This document shows positions 2,086 to 62,472 of a stretch of DNA of 64,000 nt, piece by piece. Positions within the stretch are counted from its first letter, which is position 1, and every line of letters begins with the position of its first letter. The DNA lies in the NCBI RefSeq assembly GCF_032444005.1, contig NC_091287.1, positions 565,254,001 to 565,318,000 on the forward strand. The letters run 5' to 3'. The position numbers and the translations under genes are program-made. The stretch is from Ranitomeya imitator. Lineage: Eukaryota. The notes beneath the pieces are model-generated. The model ran no database searches and was not told where the DNA came from. It saw only the letters and a program-made list of their open reading frames with translations.

Positions 2086-2283
2086 ATGGCGTGCGGGGGT
2101 CCCGTCCCCTCACAGCCGCTGCCCACAGTGCTGTTGTCGGCCCGAGCGTGGCTGGAGGAAGCGGGGAGCGGCCGGGACGCGGTGCATCTGCAGCTGAGCG
2201 TGGAGCCGGAGAGAGCCGGTGATTTCCGTCTGTCTGTGCGGAGGAGCCAAGCGGCGGCGGCGGCCCAGGGCCCGGCAGGAGCG
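2086..2283 (+). CDS. RBCK1: Exon 1 coding part, SHARPIN-like PH domain N-half (MACGG...VLLSARA...[15 protein letters not shown])
   Basis: gacATGG start in a CpG-rich region; resembles the SHARPIN LQLSADPERPGRFRL motif; donor GCG|GTGAGA, phase 0. Confidence 0.85.
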
Positions 2284-26200: not shown

Positions 26201-29200
26201 GATAACTCTCTGAGTACAGATAATGTAGTAGATGCCACCTGCAGTCCTATGTAACACCACAGATAACACAGTGATCACTCTCTGAGTACAGATAATGTAG
26301 TAGATGTCACCTGCAGTCCTATGTAACACCACAGATGACCCAGGGTTTCTCTCCTGTTGCAGAGGACTTGGCGTTGCGGCTCAGCAGATCCATTGAGGCC
26401 GGAGATCAGAAGATGGCGGCTCTGTGCGCCTCGGATCTCGCTCGGCAGAAGATCCCGCTCCACATCCAGCTGAATCCAGTGTGTTATCCTAAGAGTGAGA
26501 TCTGGTGAGTCTTGATGCTCTCGTTGACGCTGTGTGATCGGTGTCCAGGCTGACGCCTCTTTCCCTCCGCAGCATGAAGGTCGGTGTGGAGGACGCCTCG
26601 GCGTCTGTTAACATCTCCGTGCACGTGAGCGCTCACACTACGATCGCCGCTCTGAAGCAGCAGGTGAGTGGAGAAGCCCGGCCCTGGAGCGACTGCTCTG
26701 CGGATGTGGATGGCTTTTTGGCTCCTGTAACATCTAGCCATAAGCTCCAGTCACAATCAGAGCTGCAGCATGGTTTCTGTACCTTTTTTGTTAACTCCCT
26801 GGCTGCATGACGTTTCTTGCAGCTTTGGATGTGACTGGAGTATAATTCCATGGATTCCTTTTACAGATTTTCAACGAGTATCAGTTCCTCCCCAATATCC
26901 AGCGCTGGATTATCGGCCAGTGCCTCTGCTCGGACGATCGCACCGTTGCCTCTTATGGGATCAGGAAAGATGGAGACACCGCCTTCCTCTACTTGCTGGG
27001 GGCGAAACAGGCCAAACTGAATATGCAAGATCCATACACAAGCAACTTGTACCAGCCCTTCCCCCTGGTGCTCGCCTCCGGCTGGGATGAGCGCACCAAG
27101 TTCAACACCGTGCCAACCAGGTCCAGTACAAAAAATGGTGGTGAGTTACTGCATGGGGCTGGGCATGTCTGACCAAGTTATCCCTCAGACGGGTGTGCTA
27201 ACTTTATAGGCTGTAGATGAGGTGGAGGCTGTGCTCAGTTTAGTAACTGCATAGGCTGTAGATGAGGTGGAGGCTGTGCTCAGTTTAGTAACTTTATACG
27301 CTGTAAATGAGGTGGAGGCTGTGCTCAGTTTAGTAACTTTATAGGCTGTAGATGAGGTGGAGGCTGTGCTCAGTTTAGTAACTTTATACGCTGTAGATGA
27401 GGTGGAGGCTGTGCTCAGTTTAGTAACTTTATAGGCTGTAGATGAGGTGGAGGCTGTGCTCAGTTTAGTAACTTTATAGGCTGTAGATGAGGTGGAGGCT
27501 GTGCTCAGTTTAGTAACTTTATAGGCTGTAGATGAGGTGGAGGCTGTGCTCAGTTTAGTAACTTTATAGTCTGTAGATGAGGTGGAGGCTGTGCTCAGTT
27601 TAGTAACTTTATACGCTGTAGGTGATGTGGAGGCTGTGCTCAGTTTAGTAACTTTATACGCTGTAGGTGATGTGGAGGCTGTGCTCAGTTTAGTAACTTC
27701 ATAAGCTGTAGATAAGGTGGAGGTTGTGCTCAGTTTAGTAACTTTATAGGCTGTAGATGAGGTGGAGGCTGTGCTCTGTTTAGTAACTTTATAGTCTGTA
27801 GATGAGGTGGAGGCTGTGCTCAGTTTAGTAACTTTATAGGCTGTAGATGAGGTGGAGGCTGTGCTCAGTCATGTAACTATAGGCTGTAGATGAGGTGGAG
27901 GCTGTGCTCAGTCATGTAACTATAGGCAGTAGATGAGGTAGAGGCTGTGCTCAGTCATGTAACTATAGGCTGTAGATGAGGTGGAGGCTGTGCTCAGTCA
28001 TGTAACTATAGGCTGTAGATGAGGTGGAGGCTGTGCTCAGTCATGTAACTATAGGCTGTAGATGAGGTGGAGGCTGTGCTCAGTGTAGTAACTATAGGCT
28101 GTAGATAAGGTGACTGCTCAGTGTAGTAACTTTTATAGACTGTAGATTAGGTGGAGGCTGTGCTCAGTCATGTAACCATAGGCTGTAGATGAGGTGGAGG
28201 CTGTGCTCAGTTTAGTAACTTCATAAGCTGTAGATGAGGTGGAGGTTGTGCTCAGTTTAGTAACTTTATAGGCTGTAGATGAGGTGGAGGCTGTGCTCAG
28301 TTTAGTAACTTTATACGCTGTAGGTGATGTGGAGGCTGTGCTCAGTTTAGTAACTTTATACGCTGTAGGTGATGTGGAGGCTGTGCTCAGTTTAGTAACT
28401 TCATAAGCTGTAGATGAGGTGGAGGTTGTGCTCAGTTTAGTAACTTTATAGGCTGTAGATGAGGTGGAGGCTGTGCTCTGTTTAGTAACTTTATAGTCTG
28501 TAGATGAGGTGGAGGCTGTGCTCAGTTTAGTAACTTTATACGCTGTAGGTGATGTGGAGGCTGTGCTCAGTTTAGTAAATTTATAGGCTGTAGATGAGGT
28601 GGAGGCTGTGCTCAGTCATGTAACTATAGGCTGTAGATGAGGTAGAGGCTGTGCTCAGTCATGTAACTATAGGCTGTAGATGAGGTGGAGGCTGTGCTCA
28701 GTCATGTAACTATAGGCTATAGATGAGGTGGAGGCTGTGCTCAGTCATGTAACTATAGGCTGTAGATGAGGTGGAGGCTGTGCTCAGTCATGTAACTATA
28801 GGCTGTAGATGAGGTGGAGGCTGTGCTCAGTCATGTAGCTATAGGCTGTAGATGAGGTGGAGGCTGTGCTCAGTGTAGTAACTATAGGCTGTAGATAAGG
28901 TGACTGCTCAGTGTAGTAACTTTTATAGACTGTAGATTAGGTGGAGGCTGTGCTCAGTCATGTAACTATAGGCTGTAGATGAGGTGGAGGCTGTGCTCAG
29001 TGTAGTAACTATAGGCTGTAGATAAGGTGACTGCTCAGTGTAGTAACTTTTATAGACTGTAGATTAGGTGGAGGCTGTGCTCAGTCATGTAACCATAGGC
29101 TGTAGATGAGGTGGAGGCTGTGCTCCGTTTAGTAACTTCATAAGCTGTAGATGAGGTGGAGGTTGTGCTCAGTTTAGTAACTTTATAGGCTGTAGATGAG

Positions 29201-38300: not shown

Positions 38301-41300
38301 CTTCCATTATCAAACCTCGCACCACTTCCATTATCAAACCTCGCACAGCTCCCATTATGAAACCTCGCACACCTTCCATTATGAAACCTCGCACACCTTC
38401 CATTATCAAACCTTGCACCACTCCCATTATCAAACCTTGCACCACTTCCATTATCAAACCTCGCGCCACTCCCATTATGAAACCTCGCACCACTTCCATT
38501 ATGAAACCTCGCACACCTTCCATTATGAAACCTCGCACACCTTCCATTATGAAACCTCGCACACCTTCCATTATCAAACCTTGCACCACTCCCATTATGA
38601 AACCTCGCGCCACTTCCATTATGAAACCTCGCGCCACTCCCATTATGAAACCTCGCGCCACTCCCATTATGAAACCTCGCGCCACTCCCATTATGAAACC
38701 TCGCGCCACTCCCATTATGAAACCTCGCGCCACTCCCATTATGAAACCTCGCGCCACTCCCATTATGGAACCTCGCGCCACTCCCATTATGGAACCTCGC
38801 GCCACTCCCATTATCAAACCTCGCGCCACTCCCATTATCAAACCTCGCGCCACTTTAGCACCTGTAACATCAGGACCGTTCTCAGGTCTGAGCTGTAACC
38901 TACAGAGACTTCTGTCATTACAGAAGTGCAGTGTCAGTGTCCTGTGATAATACAAGTAGGTCAGGGGAAATCTGTAATGAACGTCCCTCGTGTATCTGAT
39001 CATTCTGTGTCGGAGAGCAGCCATGTTTGTCAGGTTTCGCCTATTACTGACCTCCGGGTCCTTCTTCTAGGGTCACACAATCTTCGGCCGGAGAGGATGG
39101 AGCAGACGCCGCACACCTTACACCTGGACTTCAAGTCCTTAAACATAATGCAGAAGCCCCAGGTCCCCGCTGCGCCCCCATCCCCCGCACAGGTAGGTGC
39201 CAGCCTTTACCCCTTCCACCTTCTGTGGACCCCGACTTCAACCATTTACGTGCTTCCAGTCTGTGGGGGGCTGTGAGGAGCCAGTTTGCTTGTCATGGAT
39301 TTGTCATAGACCCCCATGGCTCCCGTCTTAGCCCACCAACAATATTGTTCTGTTTCAGTCACGACATTTGCCAAAAAAAGTGATCACAACACAAATTTTT
39401 ATTTTTTTTCCCCCCGATACTTTTTATGGTAAATTGATCCCTCGACGAGGACAGAAAAACTCCAAATGTTCCGGCTCCTGGAGGAAGAGGATAACATGAA
39501 AGCGTAAAAACAAGCATGGGGCGCAGTATGGTGGGGACAAAGGGGCGTCCGGGCTCCATCATCAGATCCAGGCTGAACGCTCTGACCCACTGTAACGAGC
39601 CCTGCAGCTGTGTTAGTCGGAGTCTGTTGCAGGGGTCTCGGCAGAGCGCCCCCTGCTGTGCTGCCCTCTCTCATGCGCTGTTTTGCCTCCTGCAGCCCGG
39701 CTGGTCATGTCCTCAGTGCACCTTCATCAATAAACCCACCCGCCCCGGCTGTGAGATGTGCAGCGCCGCTCGCCCCACCGACTACGTAGTGCCGGAGGAA
39801 TACAAGCCGGACGAGACGGAGCGGCGGAGGCTGCAGCTGGAGAAGGACAGCTACCAGCAGTACAAGAAGGTAAAGGAGGAGATGCTAGCAAGTGATGTGG
39901 GAAATACAATGCGTATGCAGCTCTGGGGGTGACTGGAGTATTGGAATAGTAAATGCAGCTCTGGGGGTGACTGGAGTATTGGAATAATAAATGCAGCTCT
40001 GGGGGTGACTGGATTGGAATAGTAAATGCAGCTCCAGGGGTGACTGGAGTATTGGAATAGTAAATGCAGCTCCAGGGGTGACTGGAGTATTGGAATAGTA
40101 AATGCAGCTCCAGGGGTGACTGGAGTATTGGAATAGTAAATGCAGCTCCAGGGGTGACTGGAGTATTGGAATAGTAAATGCAGCTCCTTCCTCTTCCTCC
40201 ACAGTGTCAGTTTCCATATAGCCTATATTGTGAGTGTGCAGTCACTTTGTAGCTGGGACATTTCTCCTCCATGTACAAGCACGCTCGGCTGACTGCTGCT
40301 CCTCCATGTACAGTGGGGCAAAAAAGTATTTAGTCAGTCAGCAATAGTGCAAGTTCCACCACTTAAAAAGATGAGAGGCGTCTGTAATTTACATCATAGG
40401 TAGACCTCAACTATGGGAGACAAACTGAGAAAAAAAAATCCAGAAAATCACATTATTTTTTTTTAACATTTTATTTGCATATTATGGTGGAAAATAAGTA
40501 TTTGGTCAGAAACAAAATTTCATCTCAATACTTTGTAATATATCCTTTGTTGGCAATGACAGAGGTCAAACGTTTTCTGTAAGTCTTCACAAGGTTGCCA
40601 CACACTGTTGTTGGTATGTTGGCCCATTCCTCCATGCAGATCTCCTCTAGAGCAGTGATGTTTTTGGCTTTTCGCTTGGCAACACGGACTTTCAACTCCC
40701 TCCAAAGGTTTTCTATAGGGTTGAGATCTGGAGACTGGCTAGGCCACTCCAGGACCTTGAAATGCTTCTTACGAAGCCACTCCTTCGTTGCCCTGGTGGT
40801 GTGCTTTGGATAATTGTCATGTTGAAAGACCCAGCCACGTTTCATCTTCAATGCCCTTGCTGATGGAAGGAGGTTTGCACTCAAAATCTCACGATACATG
40901 GCCCCATTCATTCTTTCATGTACCCGGATCAGTCATCCTGGCCCCTTTGCAGAGAAACAGCCCCAAAGCATGATGTTTCCACCACCATGCTTTACAGTAG
41001 GTATGGTGTTTGATGGATGCAACTCAGTATTCTTTTTCCTCCAAACACGACAAGTTGTGTTTCTACCAAACAGTTCCAGTTTGGTTTCATCAGACCATAG
41101 GACATTCTCCCAAAACTCCTCTGGATCATCCAAATGCTCTCTAGCAAACTTCAGATGGGCCCGGACATGTACTGGCTTAAGCAGTGGGACACGTCTGGCA
41201 CTGCAGGATCTGAGTCCATGGTGGCGTAGTGTGTTACTTATGGTAGGCCTTGTTACATTGGTCCCAGCTCTCTGCAGTTCATTCACTAGGTCCCCCCGCG

Positions 41301-44300: not shown

Positions 44301-47300
44301 GGTATGTGCACACGTGTTCTGGAGGACTGCGGATTTTTCCTGCGGATTTATCGTGGTTTCTACTGCTGATTCCGCTGTGGCTTTACACCTGCAGTTTTCT
44401 ATTGGAGCAGGCGTAAAACCGCAGCGGAATCCGCACAAAGAATTAACATGCTGCGGAATGTAAACCGCTGCGTTTCCACACGTTTTTTTCCGCAGCATGT
44501 GCGCTGCGGATTTTGTTTCCCATAGGTTAACATGGTACTGTAAACTCATAGGAAACCGCTGCGGATCCGCAGCAAAATCCGCAGCGTGTGCACATACTCT
44601 AAATCCTGCTGTGATGTAATTTTGGGGACGTTTCTGCATTATTAATATCGGGATGTTCAGGATCTCTGCTTGCTGTCGCTGATCTCCAGCAGAGACAGCA
44701 AGCGCAGATCTTGAAATCCATTATTTGCTCGGCTCGGTGCAAGACAAGCTTGCGCTATATACTTGTGTGTGCGCTGAGGCAGGAATACCCCTTTAATAAC
44801 CGAGCAGTGATCCCTTTTATGATAGAAACCTTCTCTTCTTTCTTTCTCCAGGAAAAAGGAAGAAGAGAAGCGGCGCCCCCTTCCCACAAGGCGCCGGCCG
44901 GCGACTCTCTGGACGATTTTACCCTGTTACAGTGACGGTGGGAGCCGCACTGACGTCCAGGCCCGGCATGTTCCTCACCCCTTTAATGGTGACGTCATCT
45001 GTCATGGCCGCCACGAGCGCAGCGCAACCATCAAACGGACTATTAATTAGTGACTTGTTTTTGATTGGATTGATGATCACAAGACCGAGGCGGCGACGGA
45101 GGAAACGCAGCCGGCGCCTGCGGAAGAAGGGCTGCTGTCACCCGCTCCGTCTCTTTATGGGGAATTCCACCCAATAGGCCGATGAGGGGGGATGCGCAGT
45201 CCATCCCCCGCGCTGCATTGACAAGTTTCTGGACGCTCCTGGTGCTGCCGGTAGGATGTCGCCATTTACCCCCAGGGCATGAATGGGCGGCTTTGGTTAG
45301 GTGGAGCCCCCTTTAATGCGCGGTCACGTGTCTTGTGGACAGGATTGGACGCGGTTTTCAGATTTTTTTTTCTTAACCCCTTTTTAGAGGTTGTTGTTAG
45401 TGCGGGGTCAGGGAATGTACGATGGTGGGGTTTGCCGTCAAGTTCTTCACCGCCACATCCCCGACTCCTGCATTATGCTGGCAGCTCAGAGCCCCAATAT
45501 TCAGGTCAAATTTTGAGATGCGTCCTCCAGTCACAACCAAAGCTGCAACTCTTAGAACTACCATCACCTAACGATTATACTCCAGTACCTTCCAGAGCTG
45601 CACCTAAAGAGCCAGCAGAACTGTGAATGCAGCTTGGGATGGGACTAGAGCGTAGGAAGCGATGAAGCCGGCTTCTGCATAATAAGGCTACAGAGGCTGG
45701 AGCTGCGCTGCAGGCTGCCGGACCGCTCACCGGAGTCGCGAGGGTCCACATATCCGCAGCCATATTACTCAGATCGTCCTGGGGTCGGCGTCCTTTATTC
45801 ATCTCACCCGTCAATGCTGTTAACGGGCCACCCGGAAGTTACCAACACTTCTCAATCTGTATGCTCTATACACATCCAGAGCAGCATTCACAGTTCTGCT
45901 GGTCTTCATTGGACACGGACTAATGGAAAGGCTTAGTTTTCTCTGATGTGCTGTCTGAAGTCCCACAATGCAATGCTTCCTGATAGCAGCTCTGGATGTG
46001 ACTGGAGTACAAGATGTAAGGACAGAGTAGTGACTGCAGCTCTGGAGGATAAGACACAATGTAACAGCAGAATAATGATTGCAGCTCTGGAGGATAAGAC
46101 ATGATATAACAGCAGAATAATGACTGCAGCTCTGGAGGATAAGACATTATATAATAGAATAGCAACTGCAGCTCAGGAGGTGACTGGAGGATAAGACATG
46201 ATGTAACAGCAGAATAATGACTGCAGCTCTGGAGGTGACTGGATCACTTTCTGTGCATCACGTGGAGCTTTGGCCTGAGACTCTATGTAATGTGGGGTTT
46301 ACGGGTGGGGTTCCCCTTTTAAAGAAACCCCCCTCCTCCTCCTCCTCATTTATCCTCTTAGTATATTGCACCCATCATATTATACAGCACTGTGCACTCA
46401 CAATTGCTCATTTTCTACCCAGATAATTCTTCTTTTCTTTGCTCTATGTAGAAACAGGAAGTCTCTTGTCCCTGCATTTATCTTTCCCCTCTTCACCTCC
46501 TGACTCGGCTGCTCTCTCCTCCCCCTCCCAGGGATTTTTGCAGGGGCTCATGACTCATACAGGGAAAATTGACCTCCTGTTTCTACATAGAGCTTAGAAG
46601 GATTCAGCTTGTCGGTTATTAATCATGTGATGTCATAAACCTAATAGAAAAGAGACGGATTAGCCGGGTAGAAAGGTAAAACGAGCAATGTGCACACTGC
46701 TGTATAATCTGATGGCTGCACTATAGCAGGAGGATGAATGCTTTGCTGGCAGGAGGAGGAGGAGCAGGAGGGGCTTCTTTTAAGGTTTATGCACTTTATA
46801 GAAGATGTTTCTGTATCCCGGAGTGTGGTGACCCCTCGTCTCTGCAGATGGAGGGCGACTCTCAGGTATTTGGCGCTGGCTACTCAGGTTTTATTTGCAA
46901 CCTCTGCAGCAAGGAATAAAAAGGTTTTTACCGACTGGGCTCTGATTGACTCAATCCAATACTACTGGTACATAGACGTTCCTGCGGTATACGTGCACCG
47001 CGCCCACCATGGAGAAGAGGAGGGATAGTGGATGACACAGTCCTGGGATCGGCCGCTGGGTGTAAGGGCTGATGGGGAATCCAACCAGGGACTGAAGTGT
47101 GAGTGCGTGCGCGCGGTGTGCAACGTGGAGCTGTGCGTGCGTGCGCGCGCGCGCAGTGTGCAACGTGGAGCGTGCGCACATGGTGTGTTGTATTTTGGGG
47201 TCTGTAGTTTCTAATCTTCTCTGTTGCTGTATTATGGCTGTGATGTAGCAGCCTCTTCTTGTAACTGGGTCTACTGTGCTGTAGTACCTCTTTCAGCACC

Positions 47301-48035: not shown

Positions 48036-48086
<51 letters not shown>

Positions 48087-55600: not shown

Positions 55601-58600
55601 TCTCCCCTCTGCTCTCTCCCCTTCGCTCTCTCCCCTCTGCTCTCTCCCCTTCGCTCTCTCCCCTCTGCTCTCTCTCCCCTCTGCCCTCTCCCCTCTGCGC
55701 TCTCCCCTCTGCTCTCTCCCCTCTGCTCTCTCCCCTCTGCTCTCTCCCCTCTGCGCTCTCCCCTCTGCGCTCTCCCCTCTGCTCTCTCCCCTTCGCTCTC
55801 TCCCCTCTGCTCTCTTCCCTTCGCTCTCTCCCCTTCGCTCTCTCCCCTCTGTGCTCTCTCCTCTGTGCTCTCCCCTTCGCTCTCTCCCCTTCGCTCTCTC
55901 CCCTCTGCCCTCTCCCCTCTGCCCTCTCCCCTTTGCTCTCTCCCCTCTGCTCTCTCCCCTCTGCTCTCTCCCCTTCGCTCTCTCCCCTCTGCTCTCTCCC
56001 CTTCGCTCTCTCCCCTTCGCTCTCTCCCCTCTGCTCTCTCCCCTCTGCGCTCTCCCCTCTGCGCGCTCTCCCCTTCGCTCTTGCTTTTGACTCTTCCTCG
56101 TCTTGTGTTTCTGAGAAATGCGTGACCAGAAGATGCGGGCTGCGGCTGCCAGCAGGATGTAGTCTTTGTCCCCTCTTCCTGTCCTCTACAGTGTCTGCCC
56201 ATGATCTTTGCAATCTTTCATTTCATGATTCCTCTGACTTTCGTGGTGGCTGCCTGACACTGAGCCACACTTCACCTGGTCCAATTCAGGAACTAATGAA
56301 ATCCTTTGATTTTGTTCTTGTGTCATTTGAGCTATACCAGGCTCCAGTCACACCTAGACTAAAAAGTCAGTAGTACGCATAAAGCGGTGGTTGTATGTTT
56401 GTTATTTTAATTTTTTTATTTTTACATTATCCTCTGGTCACACCCAGTACATTAAGTCAACTAATGACCATTCTGTCGTCGATCAATGGTATATCATGTT
56501 TTACTCTAGTCACATCCAGAGCAGCATTAATTGTTAGAATTCATTATCCATTCTTTTTATCTTTTGGTTTGCTTTGGAGTCATATTTTGCTCCAGTCACA
56601 TCCAGAGCCGCAACACCTTTTTGTTTAGGAGTTACAGTACTTTATGCTCCAATTCCTTACATAGCTGCAAAAGTCAGTAAATTACCACTCTGATTTTGAG
56701 TAGCTGTAAATTTTCATTTTCATTTTTTCGAGGACCTGACACTTGCCGTAAACATGTTATTTTTCCCCTGGTGTAAATGCCGCTGTTCTCCTGAATCCGG
56801 CGATGTTTTTCATTTGTTTCTGCTCCTCTCTGTTCCTGAGGTTTGGCCTCTTCTTCCCTGTATATAAGTCCAGTCTTTTTTTTTCTATAGCCAAGTGGGT
56901 GTGGTTATCAGATCTTTTCTGTGTTCCTTTATGAGTTCCACTCCCACTTGGCTTACAAAATTAAAATTTTACACCTGGAAGAGGAGACTGTATCTCGGGA
57001 ACGGAGAGGGACAAGAGCAAAAGGAAAACATTGCCGGATTCAAGAGGACAGCGGCTTTTACACCAAGGGGAAAAATACATATTAACAGCTATTGACGGGT
57101 CACCTGTAAGTTATATTATGCTCTAGTCACATCCAAACCTGCATTAGAAAGTCAACAAAAATCTGCAACGTGTGCACATAACCTAAAGGGGACTGTTTAT
57201 AGTCTGTCACTGCAGAAGTCTGCAGAGGAGCTGAAAACACAAAACGGGAGATGGTTTTGATTAACGATTTGCAAATTTGCTTAATTTTCTTTTTCCATTT
57301 GGAGCAATAAAATTGTAAGAAATGCGCCGCCTGTGGTGTATCCGCGCCGGTGCATGGGTGAGCCCGTGCTCCTCACACGTCATGCTCCGTCCTTCTCTTT
57401 TCAGGCTCTGGAGAAGGAGCGGCAGCAGAACTTTCTGCATCTTCTGCAACTGGACAACGAGGTTCTGATCCCCAACCAGGAGCTTATTGAATGCCGGATT
57501 TGCTACATGGAGGTCCCTGCGGGGGTCGGGGTCCTGCTGCGGGAGTGTCTGCACAGCTTCTGTAGGTAGGTGGCTGCACAGCTTCTGTAGGTAGGTGGCT
57601 GCACAGCTTCTGTAGGTAGGTGGCTGCACAGCTTCTGTAGGCAGGTGGCTGCACAGCTTCTGTAGGCAGGTGGCTGCACAGCTTCTGTAGGCAGGTGGCT
57701 GCACAGCTTCTGTAGGCAGGTGGCTGCACAGCTTCTGTAGGCAGGTGGCTGCACAGCTTCTGTCGGTAGGTGTCTGCACAGCTTCTGTAGGTAGGTGGCT
57801 GCACAGCTTCTGTAGGTAGGTGGCTGCACCGATTCTGTAGGTAGGTGGCTGCACAGCTTCTGTAGGTAGGTGTCTGCACAGCTTCTGTAGGTAGGTGTCT
57901 GCACAGCTTCTGTAGGCAGGTGGCTGCACAGCTTCTGTAGGCAGGTGGCTGCACAGCTTCTGTAGGCAGGTGGCTGCACAGCTTCTGTAGGCAGGTGGCT
58001 GCACAGCTTCTGTAGGCAGGTGGCTGCACAGCTTCTGTAGGCAGGTGGCTGCACAGCTTCTGTAGGCAGGTGGCTGCACAGCTTCTGTAGGCAGGTGGCT
58101 GCACAGCTTCTGTAGGCAGGTGGCTGCACAGCTTCTGTAGGCAGGTGGCTGCACAGCTTCTGTAGGCAGGTGGCTGCACAGCTTCTGTAGGCAGGTGGCT
58201 GCACAGCTTCTGTAGGCAGGTGGCTGCACAGCTTCTGTAGGCAGGTGGCTGCACAGCTTCTGTAGGCAGGTGGCTGCACAGCTTCTGTAGGCAGGTGGCT
58301 GCACAGCTTCTGTAGGCAGGTGGCTGCACAGCCATCACCCATCAGCCGTAATATTACAACCACTTGTCTGATATAGCGCCTCCTGTCTGACCTGCTGAGG
58401 TCTGAACTCCACACTTCTGCTGCCAGGGGCTGGTGGTAGCTGTCTGGAGAATGGTTTCTCTTTGCAGCCTCTGTGGATTGGACTCCCATTTTCCAACTCC
58501 AGATGATAGATCAGATGGAGATCTGGGTGATGACTTGTCTCATTATTCCAAAAAGTCTTCTCACAGCTTTCTATCGTCATACCTGGATCCCACCTCAAGA

Positions 58601-61600
58601 CCCAGCAAAGCCTGCCATATATCGAGAACACTCATCAAAACCCGCCACTGCCCTGGACAGACCCACGACACATGCGGTATACTGGAACCAACTCTTGAGA
58701 GCCCCATTATTCTGGGAACACCCTATGAGCACTTCTGCGTTCCGGCAACACTCCTCTAGAGCCGCCGCATTCCAGAAACACTCCTTGATAGCTATCACAA
58801 TCCGGCAACATCTCGGGAGCTGCCGCACTCTGGCAACACTCCTCGGAAGGCGTCGTTTTCCGGAAACATTCCTCAGGAACTGTCGCATTCTGGCAACGCT
58901 CCTCGAGAGCCACCATGTTCCGGCAACGCTCCTCGGGAGCCGCTGCGTTCCTTTTCCCTCATTAGATTGTGAGCTCCTGTGACCAGAGCTGCGGTACTCA
59001 GGTTTTGTGTTGTCTCCTCCCCAGAGAATGCCTGAGACAAGTCGTGAACTGCTGCGAGGATCCAGAGGTGTCCTGTCCTTACCGGGACGATACGTATGCC
59101 TGTGACCGGAAGCTGCAGCAGAGGGAGGTCCGAGCGGTGAGTAGTCCACGCACCAGTCCCCAACAGGGTTGACAGTCCTGACCTGGAGGACACGTGCACA
59201 GCTGTAGGGAGCTCTTCACAAAGTCTCCCCCAAGAGATGGGTTCAAACGCAATAAGAAATGTGCCCCTCCTGTACCCCCATATCTGCAGCACTAGGGGTC
59301 ATAGGTAGCACGGAGGAAAACAGGGAAGCACATGAATCCTGATAGAGCGATCAATCATACTGCACTCTCCCTTCTCCACACCGTCCTCTTCCTCCTGTTC
59401 ATTTTTCTTCTTATCCTCCTTTTTACTTCCCTTTTGTACCTTTTGTTCTCGGTTTGCCCTCTGCTTTCCTCCCTTCTCCTCATCTTGTATTTCCTCTTTA
59501 ACGTTCTTTCTCCTTTTATTTTCTCCTCTTACCTCTATGAACTTTTTTTCCTCACCTTCCCTTTTCTCCAGCTGTCTTCCTCTGCTCTGTTCTTCATCTC
59601 TTCCTGTCTTTTTCCTCTCCTCTGCCTATCATCTGCTTTACTGCTCTCCCACCTCCCCTCTTTCTGCTTCTCCTGTTTTTTTGACCTCCTGTTCTCTTCC
59701 TTTACCCCCCATTTCCTTTTTTTCCCTCTTTTGCCCTTCCTGTCTTCTTCCTCTATTCTTCCCATCCTCTCTTCCCATATAACTTCCCTGCACTTCCTCT
59801 TTATTCTTCTCTACTTTTCCTGACTTCTATTTTCCTTTCTTCTTCTCTTCTTTTTTTCTTCTGGTTTTCCCCTCATTGCCTTCTTTCTTCTGCTCTTCAA
59901 CTTCTTCCTCTTCTGTTTATCCCCACGATTTCCTCTTCTTTCCTTTCTCCTCTTTCACTCTATCCCATGCTCTCCGTTTCTTTCTCCTCTGCGATTTTCC
60001 TCTTCTGTTCATCCCTTCAATCTCCTCTTTCCTTTCTCCTCTTCCCCTCTATTCTGTGCTCTCCTTCTTTGCCTTCTCCTTCTCTTCCTCTGTCTTCCTC
60101 TCCTCTTCTTTCCCCATCACCACACTCCAGTATACAGATAGTCCATGTCTGCTCCATCCTGTACGTGCGTCTTCTCTCTATTCACAGTTGGTGTCGGCGG
60201 AGGAGTATGCTCGTTTCCTGGATCACGGGCTGGTGGTGGCGGAGAGCAGAAGTCGGAACAGCTACCACTGTCGGACGGCGGACTGTAAGGGATGGTGCAT
60301 CTACGAGGACTCTGTCAATGAGTTCATTTGTCCGATATGTCGGGCTCAGAACTGCCTGATCTGCAAGGTACACTGCCCATGGATGACAAGTCGGCATGGT
60401 CGCGTGCGGGCCGGAGAGTCCTAATATAATGGGTCACCCGACATGTCCCTGAGCTCGGGAGGCTTATATTAGGTCTTGCGATGACCCATCATTGCTTTAT
60501 GTAGTTGGGAACATTGCTTGTTGAATCTCCCTCCTCCAGGCCATACATGATGGGATGAACTGCAAAGAATACCAGGACGACCTCCGCATCCGCGCTCAGA
60601 ACGACGCAGCCGCCAGACAGACCAGTGACATGCTGAAGGTGAGGACCGGGTGATTCAGGAGGGAGTTTACAGCAGGCCGGATCACATTGGACAGATAAAG
60701 TGATAGCAGGAGTATAGCGACACCTACAGTGTGTGTATACAGTGTGTGTCTGCAGGCATGTATACAATGTGTGTCTGCGGAAGTGTACACGTCTGTACAG
60801 TGTGTATTTGCTGTATACAGTACGTGTTTTGGTGTTTGCTGATGTGTATACAGTGTGTGTACACGGGCGTGTACATGTGTATTTATCTGCTGTATACAGT
60901 ACGTGTGCTTTGGTGTCTACTGTATGCAGTACGTGTGCTTTGGTGTCTGCTGTATACAGTACGTGTGCTTTGGTGTCTGCTGTATACAGTACGTGTGATT
61001 TGGTGTCTGCTGTATACAGTATGTGTGTCTTGGTGTCTGCTGTATACAGTACGTGTGTCTTGGTGTCTGCTGTATACAGTACGTGTGCCTTGGTGTCTGC
61101 TGTATACAGTACGTGTGCCTTGGTGTCTGCTGTATACAGTACGTGTGTTTTGGTGTCTGCTGTATACAGTACGTGTGCTTTGGTCTGCTGTGTACAGTAC
61201 GTGTGTCTTGGTGTCTGCTGTATACAGTACGTGTGCCTTGGTGTCTGCTGTATACAGTACGTGTGCCTTGGTGTCTGCTGTATACAGTACGTGTTTTGGT
61301 GTCTGCTGTATACAGTACGTGTGGTTTGGTCTGCGGTGTACAGTACGTGTGTCTTGGTGTCTGCTGTATACAGTACGTGTGCCTTGGTGTCTGCTGTATA
61401 CAGTACGTGTGCCTTGGTGTCTGCTGTATACAGTACGTGTGTCTTGGTGTCTGCTGTATATGGTACGTGTGTCTTGGTGTCTGCTGTATACGGTACGTGT
61501 GTCTTGGTGTCTGCTGTATACGGTACGTGTCTTGGTGTCTGCTGTATACAGTACGTGTGCCTTGGTGTCTGCTGTATACAGTACGTGTGCTTTGGTCTGC

Positions 61601-62472
61601 TGTATACAGTACGTGTGCCTTGGTGTCTGCTGTATACAGTACGTGTGCCTTGGTGTTTGCTGTATACGGTACGTGTGTCTTGGTGTCTGCTGTATACAGT
61701 ACGTGTGCCTTGGTGTCTGCTGTATACGGTACGTGTGTCTTGGTGTCTGCTGTATACGGTACGTGTGCTTTGGTGTTTGCTGTATACGGTACGTGTGCCT
61801 TGGTGTCTGCTGTATACGGTACGTGTGTCTTGGTGTCTGCTGTATACGGTACGTGTGCCTTGGTGTCTGCTGTATACGGTACGTGTGCCTTGGTGTCTGC
61901 TGTATACAGTATCTGTGCTTTGGTGTTTGCAGGCATTGACTTTTGTTTGCAGGTGTCATTTCTCTTCTCCTGCTCTTACACTGAATGTATGAGACCCTTG
62001 TAGGGGGTGACAGTGAGCGCCGGACATGTAATGTGAATGTGCTCTGTCCTCAGACCCTGGTCCAGACGGGAGAGGCCATGTACTGTCCGGCATGTGAGAT
62101 TATCGTCCAGAAGAAGGATGGCTGCGACTGGATCCGCTGTACCATGTGTCAGACTGAGATATGTTGGGTCACCAAGGGCCCTCGCTGGGGGCCACAGGTA
62201 AATTAGAGGCTGGTATACATGATGGGGCTTATAGGCAAGGGGGTAAAACAGAGTGCTGAGTCTGAATCCTGGGTACGACTCCTGCCCGGGGTCATCACAT
62301 CACGAGACTGAAGATGAATGGCCCCGGACCGTGTACTCTGTGAGCCGCCATCTTGATTGCTCATAGTTACTTTTTTTTTCCGTGTGCACAGGGTCCTGGA
62401 GACACATCTGCTGGATGTCAGTGTAATGTGAACGGAAAGAAATGTGATCCCAGATGTCAGAACTGCCACTGA
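2086..62472 (+). CDS. RBCK1: SHARPIN/RBCK1-related LUBAC E3 ligase (HOIL-1L-like with N-terminal SHARPIN PH domain; shrprbck1r type), 14 coding exons, 688 aa
   Basis: Manual splice join(2086-2283,15846-16020,24227-24340,26363-26504,26573-26663,26867-27140,39071-39192,39696-39869,57405-57565,59025-59136,60188-60367,60540-60638,62054-62197,62392-62472) = 2067 nt, open frame, GT-AG introns, phases match. Recognised PH, LTM, UBL, NZF, RING1, IBR and RING2 (QKKDGCDW...CQNCH*) motifs. Confidence 0.92.
2442..4353. mobile_element. PIF/Harbinger-like non-autonomous element carrying a 37-bp array
   Basis: TIR GGCTGTGTGCCCAC / GTGGGCACGCGGCC, TTA target duplication on both sides. Confidence 0.7.
2908..4237 (+). 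repeat. 37-bp minisatellite (ccggacccgggcgccatcgctgtacacatggggggca), ~36 copies
   Basis: Direct reading; some 36-bp variants. Confidence 0.97.
4900..5218. mobile_element. Fold-back MITE fragment with TTAA-AGGGG (Kolobok/T2-like) end
   Basis: Inverted arms centred near 5050; end cctggacatcccct-TTAA; left end not found. Confidence 0.4.
5430..9159. mobile_element. Non-autonomous piggyBac-like (TTAA) element with four ~390-bp internal repeats and a CCCTAA-like tract
   Basis: TTAA|CCCCT ... AGGGG|TTAA; marker gagtacgctgatac at 6141, 6531, 6921, 7310; left end homologous to the 18153 element. Confidence 0.75.
7470..7700 (+). repeat. Degenerate telomere-like (CCCTAA/CCCTAG)n tract inside the piggyBac-like element
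   Basis: Direct reading. Confidence 0.8.
9170..11915. mobile_element. Probable hAT-like element (CAGTGGCGTA terminus) with C-rich subterminal repeats; left end uncertain
   Basis: Right end ctagatacgccactg; degenerate ~31-bp and ~51-bp repeats at 9770-10630. Confidence 0.35.
10670..11705 (+). repeat. 19-bp GC-rich minisatellite (cctgccggccgcagccacc), ~54 near-identical copies
   Basis: Direct reading; only two adjacent variant units seen near 10917-10936. Confidence 0.97.
12230..12412. mobile_element. Harbinger-like MITE
   Basis: 24-bp TIR GGCCGGGGTCACA(A/C)TTGCGAGAAA with one mismatch, TAA duplication. Confidence 0.85.
12416..14232 (+). mobile_element. Non-autonomous Helitron-like element (3' part) containing a 21-bp array; 5' boundary uncertain
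   Basis: 3' hairpin cccgat-gcgttaga-atcggg at 14202-14221, then CTAC|T; homologous to the inverted copy at 14647. Confidence 0.6.
12938..14184 (+). repeat. 21-bp minisatellite (gcgtgggctgtgctgtatacc), ~59 copies
   Basis: Only one substitution seen (13292). Confidence 0.97.
14233..14618. mobile_element. Right part of a Tc2/pogo-like MITE
   Basis: End tcggcttatactctagtatatacgg|TA. Confidence 0.55.
14647..15160 (-). mobile_element. Short Helitron-like element, same family as 12416-14232
   Basis: Minus-strand hairpin plus CTAG|T end; three copies of a related 21-mer at 14839-14905. Confidence 0.65.
15261..15658. mobile_element. Two adjacent Harbinger-like MITEs (15261-15382, 15386-15658)
   Basis: GTGCACACG-type TIRs, TTA/TAA junctions. 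Confidence 0.6.
15846..16020 (+). CDS. RBCK1: Exon 2, PH domain C-half ([22 protein letters not shown]...[20 protein letters not shown])
   Basis: Acceptor tcgcccag|ATC, donor AG|GTGAGC; VSY...HEL and EAQRW motifs of the SHARPIN PH domain. Confidence 0.9.
16520..17580 (+). pseudogene. Degenerate Tc1 transposase
   Basis: [10 protein letters not shown]..., [19 protein letters not shown] motifs; in-frame stops and a G-run frameshift near 17120. Confidence 0.9.
21472..21815. mobile_element. Harbinger-like MITE inserted in the CCCTAA tract
   Basis: TIR GGCTATGTGC(C/A)CACG, TAA duplication. Confidence 0.85.
21825..22168. mobile_element. Harbinger-like MITE
   Basis: (A)GGTATGTGCACACG / CGTGTGCACATCCC, flanks TAA and GAA. 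Confidence 0.7.
24227..24340 (+). CDS. RBCK1: Exon 3, linker
   Basis: ttctttctgtttag| acceptor, AAG|GTGAGC donor, 114 nt, phase 1-1, open frame. Confidence 0.75.
24365..26336 (+). repeat. 72-bp minisatellite filling intron 3, ~27 copies
   Basis: gatgtcacctgcagtcctatgtaacaccacagataacacagtgataactctctgagtacagataatgtagta; period 72 (24440 to 24512). Confidence 0.97.
26363..26504 (+). CDS. RBCK1: Exon 4, LUBAC-tethering motif ([30 protein letters not shown])
   Basis: Similar to the SHARPIN/HOIL-1 LTM (L..AI..GD...AA..A..LA); AG/GT sites present. Confidence 0.9.
26573..26663 (+). CDS. RBCK1: Exon 5, UBL N-part (MKVGVEDAS...TTIAALKQQ)
   Basis: VEDA and [11 protein letters not shown] motifs; ccgcag| and CAG|GTGAGT. 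Confidence 0.93.
26867..27140 (+). CDS. RBCK1: Exon 6, UBL C-part ([11 protein letters not shown]...[17 protein letters not shown])
   Basis: Strong match to the SHARPIN/HOIL-1 UBL consensus; ttacag| and G|GTGAGT. Confidence 0.93.
27200..30663 (+). repeat. 43-45-bp minisatellite (ataggctgtagatgaggtggaggctgtgctcagtttagtaacttt), ~78 copies with block structure
   Basis: Direct reading; recurring variant blocks. Confidence 0.97.
31480..31641. mobile_element. hAT-like palindromic MITE
   Basis: CAGGGGTCCCCAAC TIR; 8-bp duplication ctattaat/ctataaat. Confidence 0.85.
31794..32612. mobile_element. Harbinger-like fold-back MITE
   Basis: GGTACCTTCACAC / GTGTAACGGTACC ends; central inverted repeat 32130-32320. 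Confidence 0.7.
33805..34148 (+). repeat. 87-bp tandem repeat (~4 copies) inside the DIRS recombinase region
   Basis: caaaat(c/a)tggaagcg at 33817, 33904, 33991, 34078. Confidence 0.9.
36024..38990 (-). mobile_element. Mariner-like element, degenerate transposase on the minus strand, expanded by a 24-bp array
   Basis: TIR (T/C)GAGGGGCGTTCATTA...; fragments [38 protein letters not shown]. Confidence 0.85.
37297..38854 (+). repeat. 24-bp minisatellite (attatcaaacctcgcgccactccc), ~65 copies
   Basis: Direct reading. Confidence 0.97.
39071..39192 (+). CDS. RBCK1: Exon 7, Pro-rich linker
   Basis: cttcttctag| acceptor, CAG|GTAGGT donor, phase 1 to 0 bridges exons 6 and 8. Confidence 0.8.
39696..39869 (+). 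CDS. RBCK1: Exon 8, NZF (RanBP2-type) zinc finger plus NZF tail
   Basis: [25 protein letters not shown] followed by helical tail; AAG|GTAAAG. Confidence 0.95.
39915..40186 (+). repeat. 38-bp minisatellite (gcagctccaggggtgactggagtattggaatagtaaat), ~7 copies
   Basis: Period 38 (40028 to 40066). Confidence 0.92.
40311..41914 (-). mobile_element. Full-length Tc1 (DD34E) transposon, 1604 bp
   Basis: TA|CAGTGGGGCAAAAAAGTATTTAGTCAGTC ... matching inverted end|TA; long TIRs. Confidence 0.95.
40525..41547 (-). pseudogene. Tc1 transposase, 340 codons with a single in-frame TGA at 40933-40935
   Basis: ORF-track pieces of 204 aa and 128 aa share a frame; WSDETK, QHDN-34-PIENLW. Confidence 0.92.
41915..44280 (+). 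repeat. 35-bp minisatellite (tacaagcacgctcggctgactgctgctcctccgtg), ~67 copies; one more copy at 40263-40310
   Basis: Direct reading. Confidence 0.97.
44300..44599. mobile_element. Harbinger-like MITE
   Basis: GGGTATGTGCACACG / CGTGTGCACATACTC, TAA duplication. Confidence 0.85.
44850..45850. promoter_or_regulatory. Intronic CpG-rich segment with promoter-like motifs
   Basis: TGACGTCA (CRE) near 44989, ATTGG/CCAAT boxes, CCGGAAGT near 45832, minus-strand CCG|GTGAGC donor at 45731. Confidence 0.35.
44852..44935 (+). CDS. Candidate alternative terminal exon ([27 protein letters not shown]) after the NZF exon
   Basis: Strong acceptor ccttctcttctttctttctccag|G in intron 8; in frame with phase-0 exon 8; no transcript evidence available. 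Confidence 0.35.
   Translation, partial: EKGRREAAPPSHKAPAGDSLDDFTLLQ
46020..46240 (+). repeat. Degenerate ~45-bp repeat (actgcagctctggaggataagac...)
   Basis: 4-5 copies. Confidence 0.7.
48094..49540 (+). mobile_element. Degenerate Tc1 element inserted in the 5' LTR
   Basis: TIR cagaat(a/t)att(c/a)ggcaagttg; fragments [28 protein letters not shown]. Confidence 0.85.
49771..50172. mobile_element. Harbinger-like MITE
   Basis: GGCTACTTTCACACTAG perfect TIR, TAA duplication. Confidence 0.9.
53761..54052. mobile_element. hAT-like MITE inside the 3' LTR
   Basis: TAGTGATGAG TIR; 8-bp duplication gttatgat/gttataat. Confidence 0.85.
54890..56075 (+). repeat. 14-bp pyrimidine minisatellite (ctctctcccctctg / ctctctccccttcg), ~85 copies
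   Basis: Direct reading. Confidence 0.95.
56728..57108. mobile_element. Fold-back MITE (Kolobok-like)
   Basis: Inverted arms 56753-56830 vs 57005-57083; termini degenerate. Confidence 0.55.
57405..57565 (+). CDS. RBCK1: Exon 9, RING1 first half (ECRIC...ECLHSFC)
   Basis: C3HC4 ligands; ttttcag| and AG|GTAGGT. Confidence 0.95.
57545..58332 (+). repeat. 25-bp minisatellite spanning the exon 9 / intron 9 junction, ~31 copies
   Basis: Unit gtggctgcacagcttctgtagg(t/c)ag; first unit lies in the coding exon. Confidence 0.97.
59025..59136 (+). CDS. RBCK1: Exon 10, RING1 second half (ECL...VSCPY...AC)
   Basis: Phase 2 to 0; cccag| and GCG|GTGAGT. Confidence 0.93.
59350..60125 (+). repeat. CT-rich low-complexity tract
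   Basis: Direct reading. Confidence 0.8.
60188..60367 (+). CDS. RBCK1: Exon 11, IBR ([12 protein letters not shown]...CPIC...NCLICK)
   Basis: HOIL-1 IBR motif; cacag| and AAG|GTACAC. Confidence 0.95.
60540..60638 (+). CDS. RBCK1: Exon 12 ([28 protein letters not shown])
   Basis: Closely resembles the corresponding HOIL-1 segment; AG/GT sites present. Confidence 0.95.
60815..61930 (+). repeat. 30-bp minisatellite (acgtgtgctttggtgtctgctgtatacagt), ~37 copies
   Basis: Period 30 on line 60961. Confidence 0.96.
62054..62197 (+). CDS. RBCK1: Exon 13, RING2 with catalytic Cys (CPAC...[11 protein letters not shown])
   Basis: RBR active-site motif intact; CAG|GTAAAT. Confidence 0.96.
62392..62472 (+). 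CDS. RBCK1: Exon 14, C-terminal zinc cluster ([26 protein letters not shown])
   Basis: HOIL-1-specific C-terminus ending CQNCH, TGA at 62470-62472. Confidence 0.95.

What the first reader, a model, noticed from the sequence alone, without database searches (positions are those of the whole stretch)
44829..44935. Candidate alternative last exon: one gene could yield both a SHARPIN-like and a HOIL-1-like LUBAC subunit
Seen: intron 8 separates the NZF exon from RING1 and contains a strong acceptor (about 20 pyrimidines then CAG|G at 44852). It is in frame with phase-0 exon 8 and closes after 27 codons. AATAAA occurs downstream at 46915 and near 47487. Known: SHARPIN is PH-LTM-UBL-NZF, while HOIL-1L is LTM-UBL-NZF-RBR. 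Inference: splicing 39869 to 44852 would give a 457-aa PH-LTM-UBL-NZF protein without the RBR, so alternative termination could set the ratio of adaptor to ligase subunit from a single locus. A chance cryptic acceptor is also possible.
Basis: partly seen in the sequence, partly recalled or inferred. Interest (0 to 1): 0.75.

Follow-up and report, generated by a model that had tools for sequence, protein, structure and literature searches.

The report
Real alternative last exon, RBR-less isoform
The suspected exon is real: this frog gene of the SHARPIN/HOIL-1 family makes both a full ubiquitin ligase and a short ligase-less adaptor form by ending its message early. The same short form, with a conserved tail, occurs in frogs, reptiles and birds.

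Summary

**The site.** The acceptor at 44852 is the best-scoring of 928 AG sites in the 17.5-kb intron 8. It is in frame with the NZF exon and closes after 27 codons, giving a 457-aa PH-LTM-UBL-NZF product.

**Use in RNA.**
- RNA-derived contigs of four runs from three related species all begin to fit the genome at 44850. Each carries 7 to 27 further letters unlike the intron.
- 44702-44835 has no cover in three runs and next to none in the fourth.
- The window species' contigs end at 46934-46939, just after the only AATAAA (46915).
- In another frog, nine runs hold complete mRNAs that join the NZF exon to the orthologous exon.

**Conservation.** The tail, (E/G)KGRRE…SLDDFxxL, is kept in RBR-less proteins of Xenopus, Rhinoderma, chicken, alligator, snakes and gecko. 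Some of these are annotated as 'sharpin isoform X2'. The motif fits a canonical LIR, but that reading is an inference.

**What was not shown.**
- The donor in this species.
- The ratio of the two isoforms.
- Whether this locus is the only source of these subunits in frogs.

**Novelty.** This is a new member of a known kind: the mammalian RBCK2/HOIL-N isoform lacks the RBR in the same way. I found no paper describing this exon.

The parts
2086..2283 (+). Exon 1: start codon and first half of the Sharpin-type PH domain
   Evidence: Pfam Sharpin_PH, E 3.7e-07. tblastn of P0092, P0095 and P0186. GT donor.
15846..16020 (+). Exon 2: second half of the PH domain
   Evidence: Pfam Sharpin_PH, E 1.3e-20. 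AG/GT borders.
24227..24340 (+). Exon 3: linker
   Evidence: tblastn of frog proteins. Borders and frame.
26363..26504 (+). Exon 4: LUBAC-tethering motif (LTM)
   Evidence: Pfam LTM, E 1.9e-18. Matches to the LTM of HOIL-1L and SHARPIN in the PDB.
26573..26663 (+). Exon 5: first half of the UBL
   Evidence: tblastn at 85-87% identity to frog proteins.
26867..27140 (+). Exon 6: second half of the UBL plus linker
   Evidence: PDB matches: SHARPIN UBL 60 bits, HOIL-1L UBL 49 bits. Borders.
39071..39192 (+). Exon 7: linker
   Evidence: tblastn. Best-scoring borders.
39696..39869 (+). Exon 8: NZF core plus the HOIL-1L-type NZF tail helix. Its phase-0 donor at 39869|GTAAAG would be shared by the two isoforms.
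   Evidence: Pfam Zn_ribbon_RanBP. 80 bits to the HOIL-1L NZF, PDB 3b08. In the related frog mRNA L001 this exon is joined directly to the orthologue of 44852.
44819..44851 (+). Acceptor of the alternative last exon: candidate branch A at 44819, polypyrimidine tract 44830-44849, AG at 44850-44851
   Evidence: Best acceptor score of the intron. Contigs of four runs begin to fit the genome at 44850, and the stretch just upstream has no cover in three of them.
44852..44935 (+). Coding part of the alternative last exon: 27 codons plus TGA
   Evidence: Translation. 78% and 73% identity to the tails of P0092 and P0095. Five of the six listed substitutions against species B and C are at third codon positions.
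44852..44869 (+). Conserved basic block EKGRRE. The GA-rich RNA here also resembles a GAR splicing enhancer.
   Evidence: G3, R4 and R5 are invariant and K2 and E6 nearly so in 13 tails. The nucleotides are identical in L001.
44906..44929 (+). Conserved block SLDDFTLL: a LIR-like short linear motif (acidic residues, then F-x-x-L)
   Evidence: F23 is invariant and L20 and D22 nearly so. The LIR consensus and the known LIRs DDDWTHLSS, TDDFVMVPA and HDDFVMIDF are in PMC5538626. The tail is predicted disordered.
44936..46937 (+). 3' untranslated part of the alternative last exon, about 2.0 kb. It holds a high-copy 45-nt repeat at 45981-46243.
   Evidence: X1 contig 44850-46027 with no mismatch. 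X1 contig 46584-46939 and X9 contig 46601-46934. Zero depth at 46980-47247.
46915..46920 (+). Poly(A) signal AATAAA of the short isoform
   Evidence: It is the only AATAAA or ATTAAA between 44852 and 47485. Contigs end 14-19 nt after it.
57405..57569 (+). Exon 9: start of RING1. This is the competing canonical acceptor of the long isoform.
   Evidence: tblastn of the 690-aa frog protein P0186 at 87% identity. Acceptor score 21.0.
59023..62472 (+). Exons 10-14: rest of RING1, IBR, RING2 and the C-terminal zinc finger. The tblastn blocks are 59023-59139, 60185-60367, 60531-650, 62051-62197 and 62389-62469. The stop codon follows at 62470-62472. Borders are approximate.
   Evidence: tblastn of P0186 at 80-96% identity. 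Pfam IBR and RING hits.

Best explanation
44852 to about 46937 is a genuine alternative last exon of a frog gene of the SHARPIN/HOIL-1 family. The gene encodes PH, LTM, UBL, NZF and an RBR.

**How the two products arise.**
- Short form: the exon 8 donor (39869) pairs with the acceptor at 44852, and the RNA is cleaved after the AATAAA at 46915. The mRNA then encodes a 457-aa PH-LTM-UBL-NZF protein with no RBR. It ends in a conserved, disordered 27-aa tail (EKGRRE ... SLDDFTLL).
- Long form: the donor pairs with exon 9 at 57405, giving the long PH...RBR ligase (690 aa in the frog protein P0186).

**What is shown.**
- The acceptor is used in this species.
- The transcript ends at the predicted signal.
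- The exon 8 to tail-exon junction exists in a related frog.
- The exon, its reading frame and its motif are conserved across tetrapods.

**What is inferred.**
- The donor in this species is exon 8.
- The short protein binds HOIP through its LTM and UBL, as SHARPIN and mammalian HOIL-N do.
- The choice between splicing to 44852 with polyadenylation and splicing to exon 9 sets the adaptor-to-ligase ratio.
- The DDFxxL block is a docking motif of the LIR type.
For: - **Use in this species.** Contigs of X1 and X9 (same species, two studies) and of X10 and X12 (two other species) all start to fit at 44850. They carry 27, 7, 27 and 27 further letters that do not fit the intron. The two-letter overlap 'AG' matches the last two letters of exon 8. 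The 27+2 letters are close to k-1 of the assembler, as expected where one donor feeds two acceptors. Depth is 0 at 44702-44835 in X1, X9 and X12.
- **Transcript end.** Contigs end at 46934 and 46939, and depth is 0 at 46980-47247. 46915 is the only poly(A) signal in range.
- **Junction in a relative.** Nine runs hold a complete 462-aa short-form mRNA. Exon 8 is joined to the orthologue of 44852 with almost the same letters on both sides.
- **Conservation.** Tails of 12 RBR-less proteins from frogs, reptiles, birds and unidentified RNA assemblies align with G3, R4, R5 and F23 invariant.
- **Coding constraint.** Five of the six listed substitutions against species B and C are at third codon positions (p = 0.018). 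Fourteen substitutions fall in the next 82 untranslated bases.
- **Product.** The 457-aa ORF has AG/GT at every border. The domains are confirmed.
- **Precedent.** The mammalian RBR-less variant HOIL-N/RBCK2 is expressed as a protein and is linked to mild phenotypes in HOIL-1L-/- mice (PMC6044281).
Against: - The laid stretch did not include exon 8. I avoided the 2.4-kb minisatellite between the two exons. The 27 loose letters were not printed, so the donor in this species is inferred and not read.
- All runs are assembled contigs whose RNA nature is a guess by the tool. They give no strand, no poly(A) tail and no isoform ratio.
- No single contig spans the exon. A high-copy repeat at 45981-46243 breaks it.
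- The polypyrimidine tract can pair with the first 19 nt of the exon (-35.5 kcal/mol), which might lower use of the acceptor.
- The short protein of this species is not in the protein collection.
- Only the best-supported differences were listed, so the third-position count may be incomplete.
Confidence: 0.88

Rival explanations
1. The site is a chance cryptic acceptor in a long intron that is never or hardly ever used. The 27-codon frame is just what random sequence gives.
For: The ORF length is typical of random sequence. The tract is half of an inverted repeat, which could exist for reasons other than splicing.
Against: Contigs of four runs from three species start exactly there, with unlike letters upstream and little or no intron cover. 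The orthologous exon is joined to exon 8 in nine runs of another frog. The tail is conserved from frogs to birds.
Confidence: 0.02
2. The exon is real, but in this species it belongs to a separate transcript. That could be a non-coding RNA or one started from a promoter inside intron 8, spliced from some exon other than exon 8. No PH-LTM-UBL-NZF protein would then arise here.
For: The donor was not read in this species. CpG observed/expected is near 1, and a perfect CRE palindrome lies just downstream of the stop.
Against: The frame from exon 8 is open and encodes the conserved tail. The 'AG' overlap and the k-1-sized loose end fit a shared donor such as exon 8. Orthologous mRNAs use exon 8. 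A private first exon would give a longer loose end.
Confidence: 0.05
3. The short mRNA is made, but it is a by-product of premature intronic polyadenylation that only lowers the output of the ligase. The truncated protein and its tail would have no function of their own.
For: Intronic polyadenylation often acts this way (general knowledge). No protein evidence was available here. The structure model gives the tail no fold.
Against: The tail shows third-position-biased change. Residues are invariant across an amphibian-to-amniote span of over 300 million years (the date is from general knowledge). The exon follows exactly after a complete NZF plus tail helix. The RBR-less mammalian HOIL-N is a stable protein with an effect on phenotype.
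Confidence: 0.05

Closest known systems
RBCK2 / HOIL-N, the RBR-less splice variant of mammalian RBCK1/HOIL-1L (Tokunaga et al. 1998; Tatematsu et al. 2008; Fujita et al. 2018, PMC6044281)
   Same: It is one gene of the same family. The variant keeps the N-terminal UBL-containing part and lacks the RING-IBR-RING part. It is reported to modulate the full-length protein (PMC4064560) and is linked to the mild phenotype of HOIL-1L-/- mice that still express it (PMC6044281).
   Different: The mammalian gene has no PH domain, so its variant is not SHARPIN-like in architecture. Whether the mammalian variant uses a homologous exon or carries the KGRRE...DDFxxL tail was not tested, because the 1998 paper is not held. 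By PDB scores the frog gene leans towards the SHARPIN lineage.
Mammalian SHARPIN (PH-LTM-UBL-NZF adaptor of LUBAC)
   Same: The short isoform has the same domain order. Sharpin_PH, LTM, UBL and NZF were all detected. The frog-type LTM-UBL scores higher to mouse SHARPIN (113 bits) than to HOIL-1L (102 bits). NCBI names many of these genes 'sharpin'.
   Different: SHARPIN is a gene without RBR exons, whereas here the same architecture is one of two outputs of an RBR gene. The frog NZF exon carries the HOIL-1L-type tail helix. The conserved KGRRE...DDFxxL tail is, from my memory of its sequence, absent from the human SHARPIN C-terminus; this was not tested here.
Predicted short isoforms in public annotation: 'sharpin isoform X2' of chicken (P0091), 'RBCK1-like isoform X2' of Rhinoderma darwinii (P0095), XENTR_v10017381 of Xenopus tropicalis (P0088)
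   Same: They use the same exon position, directly after the NZF exon. They carry the same tail motif and lack the RBR in the same way.
   Different: These are automatic predictions in other species. I found no paper that describes them. In this frog, in P0092 and in Rhinoderma the tail stops right after DDFxLLQ and lacks the final LS.E.C residues of Xenopus and amniotes.
Canonical LC3-interacting regions: p62 DDDWTHLSS, ULK1 TDDFVMVPA, ATG13 HDDFVMIDF (PMC5538626)
   Same: The conserved block is (S)L(D/E)DF-x-x-(L/I/V), preceded by Ser and acidic residues, in a disordered C-terminal tail. The amniote version, LDDFIHLSS, nearly copies the p62 motif.
   Different: No binding to Atg8-family proteins was tested. 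One snake protein has F at the last core position. Short motifs of this type also arise by chance and can serve other partners.

Membership tests
Alternative last exon with intronic polyadenylation | An acceptor inside an intron of the long isoform is used in RNA | tested here: met
   Contigs of four runs start to fit at 44850 with unlike letters upstream. 44702-44835 has no cover in three runs and next to none in the fourth.
Alternative last exon with intronic polyadenylation | The exon has its own poly(A) signal and the transcript ends there | tested here: met
   AATAAA lies at 46915. Contigs end at 46934 and 46939, followed by zero depth. Contigs cannot show a poly(A) tail.
Alternative last exon with intronic polyadenylation | The upstream donor is shared with the downstream canonical exon | tested here: inconclusive
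   The junction is shown in a related frog. In this species there is only the AG overlap and the k-1-sized loose end. The long isoform is supported by colinear exons 9-14, not by RNA of this species.
SHARPIN-type adaptor (architecture) | N-terminal Sharpin-type PH domain | tested here: met
   Pfam PF16764 on exons 1 and 2, E 3.7e-07 and 1.3e-20. PDB 4emo matches P0186.
SHARPIN-type adaptor (architecture) | LTM, UBL and NZF present, with no RBR in the product | tested here: met
   The 457-aa ORF ends before the RING1 exon.
SHARPIN-type adaptor (architecture) | Orthology to mammalian SHARPIN | tested here: inconclusive
   Over the LTM-UBL segment, P0186 scores 113 bits to SHARPIN and 102 to HOIL-1L. 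PH-less teleost RBCK1 scores 88 and 131. The window's LTM exon alone leans to HOIL-1L. No tree with mammalian sequences and no synteny was available.
SHARPIN-type adaptor (architecture) | Binds the HOIP UBA and stabilises LUBAC | not testable with these tools
   Needs co-immunoprecipitation or reconstitution.
HOIL-1L/RBCK1-type RBR ligase (long isoform) | RING1-IBR-RING2 exons downstream in the same orientation and colinear with full-length relatives | tested here: met
   tblastn of P0186 over 57402-62469 at 80-96% identity. Pfam RING and IBR hits.
RBCK2/HOIL-N-type splice variant | Shares the N-terminal part with the ligase, lacks the RBR, and has a private C-terminal tail | tested here: met
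.
RBCK2/HOIL-N-type splice variant | The tail exon is homologous to the mammalian RBCK2 exon | not tested
   No mammalian sequence was on hand, and the 1998 paper is not held.
Canonical LIR | Core [W/F/Y]-x-x-[L/I/V] with acidic residues or Ser/Thr upstream, in a disordered region | tested here: met
   12 of 13 tails fit and F is invariant. The tail has pLDDT under 50. The consensus is from PMC5538626.
Canonical LIR | Binds LC3/GABARAP | not testable with these tools
   Needs a pull-down or ITC with the tail peptide and an F-to-A mutant.

The most novel reading that the evidence does not exclude
The PH+RBR genes of fish, amphibians, reptiles and birds are the orthologues of mammalian SHARPIN. 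Since at least the tetrapod ancestor they have been dual-output genes: a ligase, and an adaptor made through this alternative last exon. Mammalian SHARPIN would then be the frozen short output, left after the RBR exons were lost. The conserved DDFxxL tail would be a working LC3/GABARAP (or other) docking site, tying the adaptor form of LUBAC to autophagy in non-mammals.
Probability: 0.3. Interest if true: 0.7.

Novelty: new member of a known kind. Interest (0 to 1): 0.55.

Why it matters
LUBAC biology rests almost wholly on mammals, where the adaptor (SHARPIN) and the accessory ligase (HOIL-1L) are products of separate genes.

This frog locus, and its counterparts in other frogs, reptiles and birds, shows that a single gene can give both kinds of subunit. 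It does so by choosing between an early terminal exon and the RBR exons.

- It offers a concrete model for how SHARPIN arose.
- It gives a natural system for asking what the RBR adds to a SHARPIN-like protein. Xenopus and chicken have the same exon.
- It points to a conserved tail motif of unknown function that mammalian work could not have seen.

For annotating this genome, it means the gene needs two 3' ends.

Tried and rejected
- **Word search with the tail region of P0092.** It found only P0092 itself. The short protein of this species is therefore not in the collection.
- **Pfam on the 74-aa open frame through the acceptor.** No family matched.
- **Is the exon part of a repeat?** Only 44326-44605 upstream and the 45-nt repeats in the UTR recur in the window. 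The exon itself does not.
- **AlphaFold2 of the short isoform on a 10-sequence alignment.** Mean pLDDT was 53. Only the PH domain and parts of the LTM, the UBL and the NZF tail helix were confident, and the tail was under 50. I ran no fold search on such a model.
- **Papers.** Tokunaga 1998 and Landgraf 2010 are not held. Four literature searches found no description of the non-mammalian short isoform or of a LIR in SHARPIN or HOIL-1.
- **Choice of the laid stretch.** I left exon 8 out of the single read-laying run. The price is that the donor was not read.
- **The chance-acceptor reading.** I started at about 75% for it and dropped it.
Full report
**1. The observation**

The sequence is as described. 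Exon 8 is 39696-39869. It encodes the NZF and ends in phase 0 with ...TACAAGAAG before gtaaag.

At 44830-44851 lies a 20-base pyrimidine run followed by AG. Reading from 44852 gives 27 codons, [27 protein letters not shown], and then TGA.

The next canonical exon (RING1) starts at 57405, so intron 8 is about 17.5 kb.

By a crude score (pyrimidine content, -3 base, +1 G, no upstream AG) this acceptor is the best of 928 AG sites in the intron. It scores 22.75, and the canonical exon 9 acceptor scores 21.0. A candidate branch point (TTTAT) lies 32 nt upstream.

The 27-codon length carries no weight. The other high-scoring AGs of the intron mostly run 5 to 66 codons before a stop.

AATAAA occurs at 46915 and 47486, and nowhere else between 44852 and 47485.

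**2. The gene**

Pfam finds the following:
- Sharpin_PH on exons 1 and 2
- LTM on exon 4
- a RanBP-type zinc finger on exon 8
- RING and IBR signals on the downstream exons

PDB sequence searches give these matches:
- The UBL exon scores 60 bits to SHARPIN and 49 bits to HOIL-1L.
- The NZF exon, including the helix that follows the finger, scores 80 bits to the HOIL-1L NZF of 3b08.

A 690-aa frog protein (P0186) is colinear with 14 exon blocks from 2086 to 62469. Joining exons 1-8 to the candidate exon gives an open frame of exactly 457 aa, with AG/GT at every border.

**3. Is the exon used?**

A search of public runs with 44640-47600 found 18 runs from 6 studies that hold about 60% of the stretch. 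All are small contig sets that the tool guesses to be RNA.

I laid four runs on 44300-48299. X1 and X9 are one species from two studies. X10 and X12 are two other species.
- In all four, a contig begins to fit the genome at 44850.
- Each carries further letters (27, 7, 27, 27) that do not fit the intron.
- The bin 44702-44835 has zero depth in X1, X9 and X12, and 3.6 against about 160 in X10.

Exon 8 ends in AG, which explains why the fit starts two bases before 44852. The 27+2 letters are about the k-1 overlap of the assembler. That is what is expected where one donor feeds two acceptors.

In the window's species, one contig covers 44850-46027 without a mismatch. Others end at 46934 and 46939, which is 14-19 nt after the AATAAA. 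Depth is zero over 46980-47247, so the second AATAAA is not used there.

A high-copy repeat at 45981-46243 breaks the contigs, so no single contig spans the exon.

I did not include exon 8 in the stretch, because the 2.4-kb minisatellite at 41913-44284 lies between the two exons. The loose letters were not printed. The donor in this species is therefore inferred.

**4. Relatives**

A phmmer search with PH exon 2 and a word search with the C-terminal region of one hit returned two groups of proteins.
- **Long PH...RBR proteins of 680-726 aa.** These come from sturgeons, rays, frogs, lizards, snakes, turtles and birds. They are named either 'RBCK1(-like)' or 'sharpin'.
- **Proteins of 420-500 aa with no RBR.** These stop shortly after the NZF exon.

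The C-termini of the second group all continue from ...QYKK or ...QYQQ into (E/G)KGRRE, about 12 variable residues, and then SLDDF-x-x-L. They include:
- an unidentified frog assembled from RNA (P0092)
- Rhinoderma darwinii isoform X2
- Xenopus tropicalis and X. laevis
- chicken 'sharpin isoform X2'
- alligator
- two snakes
- a gecko
- three further RNA assemblies

In the alignment of 13 tails, G3, R4, R5 and F23 are invariant. K2, E6, L20 and D22 are nearly so.

P0092 is encoded by complete mRNA contigs of about 2.1 kb in nine runs. Aligned to the window, such a contig passes from 39693-39874 straight to 44850-44937. The letters on either side of the junction are almost those of the window. 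The window's 457-aa product is 76% identical to P0092.

**5. Coding constraint**

Against species B and C, the six listed substitutions inside the 84 coding bases fall as follows:
- four synonymous changes at third positions
- one third-position change, H to Q
- one first-position change, K to Q

The next 82 untranslated bases carry 14 substitutions. Five or more of six at third positions has p = 0.018. The caveat is that only the best-supported differences were listed. A 12-base insertion, a multiple of three, lies at the stop codon in B and C.

**6. What the tail may do**

The model of the short form gives the tail pLDDT under 50, so it is probably disordered.

Its conserved block, Ser-Leu-Asp/Glu-Asp-Phe-x-x-Leu/Ile/Val, fits the canonical LIR consensus [W/F/Y]-x-x-[I/L/V] with acidic and Ser/Thr residues upstream. 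It resembles the listed LIRs of p62 (DDDWTHLSS), ULK1 (TDDFVMVPA) and ATG13 (HDDFVMIDF) (PMC5538626). The amniote version reads LDDFIHLSS.

This is a resemblance and not a test. I found no paper on a LIR in SHARPIN or HOIL-1.

**7. Mechanism**

Shown:
- the acceptor is used
- the transcript ends after the AATAAA at 46915
- exon, frame and motif are conserved

Inferred:
- After exon 8 is transcribed, its donor can pair with the strong acceptor 5 kb downstream. A GA-rich enhancer-like run follows that acceptor, and cleavage at about 46937 then fixes the short form.
- Or the donor can wait for the acceptor of exon 9, 12.5 kb further on, which gives the ligase.
- The short form keeps the LTM and UBL, which in mammals bind HOIP, and a complete HOIL-1L-type NZF. 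It should therefore sit in LUBAC as an adaptor without ligase activity.
- Mammalian precedent comes from HOIL-N/RBCK2. It is an RBR-less variant expressed as a ~30-kDa protein. HOIL-1L-/- mice that still express it have a mild phenotype (PMC6044281). It also inhibits nuclear migration of RBCK1 (PMC4064560).
- The polypyrimidine tract and the GA-rich exon start can pair into a 19-bp hairpin. This might tune use of the acceptor, but I did not follow it up.

**8. Comparison and novelty**

The kind, an RBR-less isoform of a HOIL-1-family gene, is known from mammals. The very exon is already present as automatic predictions in other species.

New here:
- evidence of use in this species
- the breadth of conservation
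- the conserved tail motif

The frog-type LTM-UBL scores higher to mouse SHARPIN (113 bits) than to HOIL-1L (102 bits). PH-less teleost RBCK1 does the reverse, 88 against 131. This suggests that the PH+RBR genes are SHARPIN orthologues that kept the RBR. Mammalian SHARPIN would then correspond to the short output. That stays a hypothesis, because I had no mammalian full-length sequences for a tree and no synteny.

Whether frogs also carry a PH-less RBCK1 was not tested, so 'a single locus' may be too strong.

**9. Verdict**

- It is a new member of a known kind.
- Interest is moderate. It is a real and conserved feature with a testable evolutionary and functional angle, but it is already visible in public annotation and parallels RBCK2/HOIL-N.

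**10. Earlier notes of this scan**

The first I tested and found to hold. For the second I saw the array in passing.

Noticed in passing
window 44830-44870: The pyrimidine tract of the used acceptor and the GA-rich first 19 nt of the exon are an inverted repeat. As RNA they fold into a hairpin (-35.5 kcal/mol, z -3.2). The GA-rich run is identical in the related frog's mRNA and looks like a GAR splicing enhancer.
   Followed up: partly
window 45981-46243: A 45-nt tandem repeat inside the 3' UTR of the alternative exon shows enormous word depth in the RNA contigs, up to about 8e5 in run X10. It breaks all contigs, so it belongs to a high-copy or highly expressed repeat family.
   Followed up: no
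window 44950-45200: A perfect CRE palindrome, TGACGTCA, lies near 44990, and CpG observed/expected is about 1 just after the stop codon. This could be a regulatory element or internal promoter inside the terminal exon.
   Followed up: no
window 44929-44939: The two related species (runs X10 and X12) carry a 12-base insertion at the stop codon. Their tails may therefore be four residues longer, or the stop may be shifted. The letters were not shown.
   Followed up: no
window 57545-58332: A 25-nt unit repeated 31.5 times starts right at the donor of exon 9. Other intron minisatellites lie at 37296-38854, 41913-44284, 54895-56062 and 60886-61930.
   Followed up: partly
window 16502-17577, 40525-41547 (-), 48404-49131: Open frames that look like decayed Tc1/mariner-type transposase lie inside the introns.
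   Followed up: no
window 50716-53300: Open frames that look like decayed reverse transcriptase and integrase of an LTR retrotransposon lie in intron 8, split over several frames.
   Followed up: no
proteins P0186 and P0191 (not in the window): Frog PH+RBR proteins lean towards SHARPIN in the LTM-UBL part, and PH-less teleost RBCK1 leans towards HOIL-1L. This suggests two old lineages, with the RBR lost from SHARPIN only in mammals.
   Followed up: partly
proteins P0036 and P0196 (not in the window): A cyprinid protein (404 aa) and a chicken UniProt entry (385 aa) stop a few residues after the NZF core with unrelated tails. They may represent other truncated forms or annotation errors.
   Followed up: no
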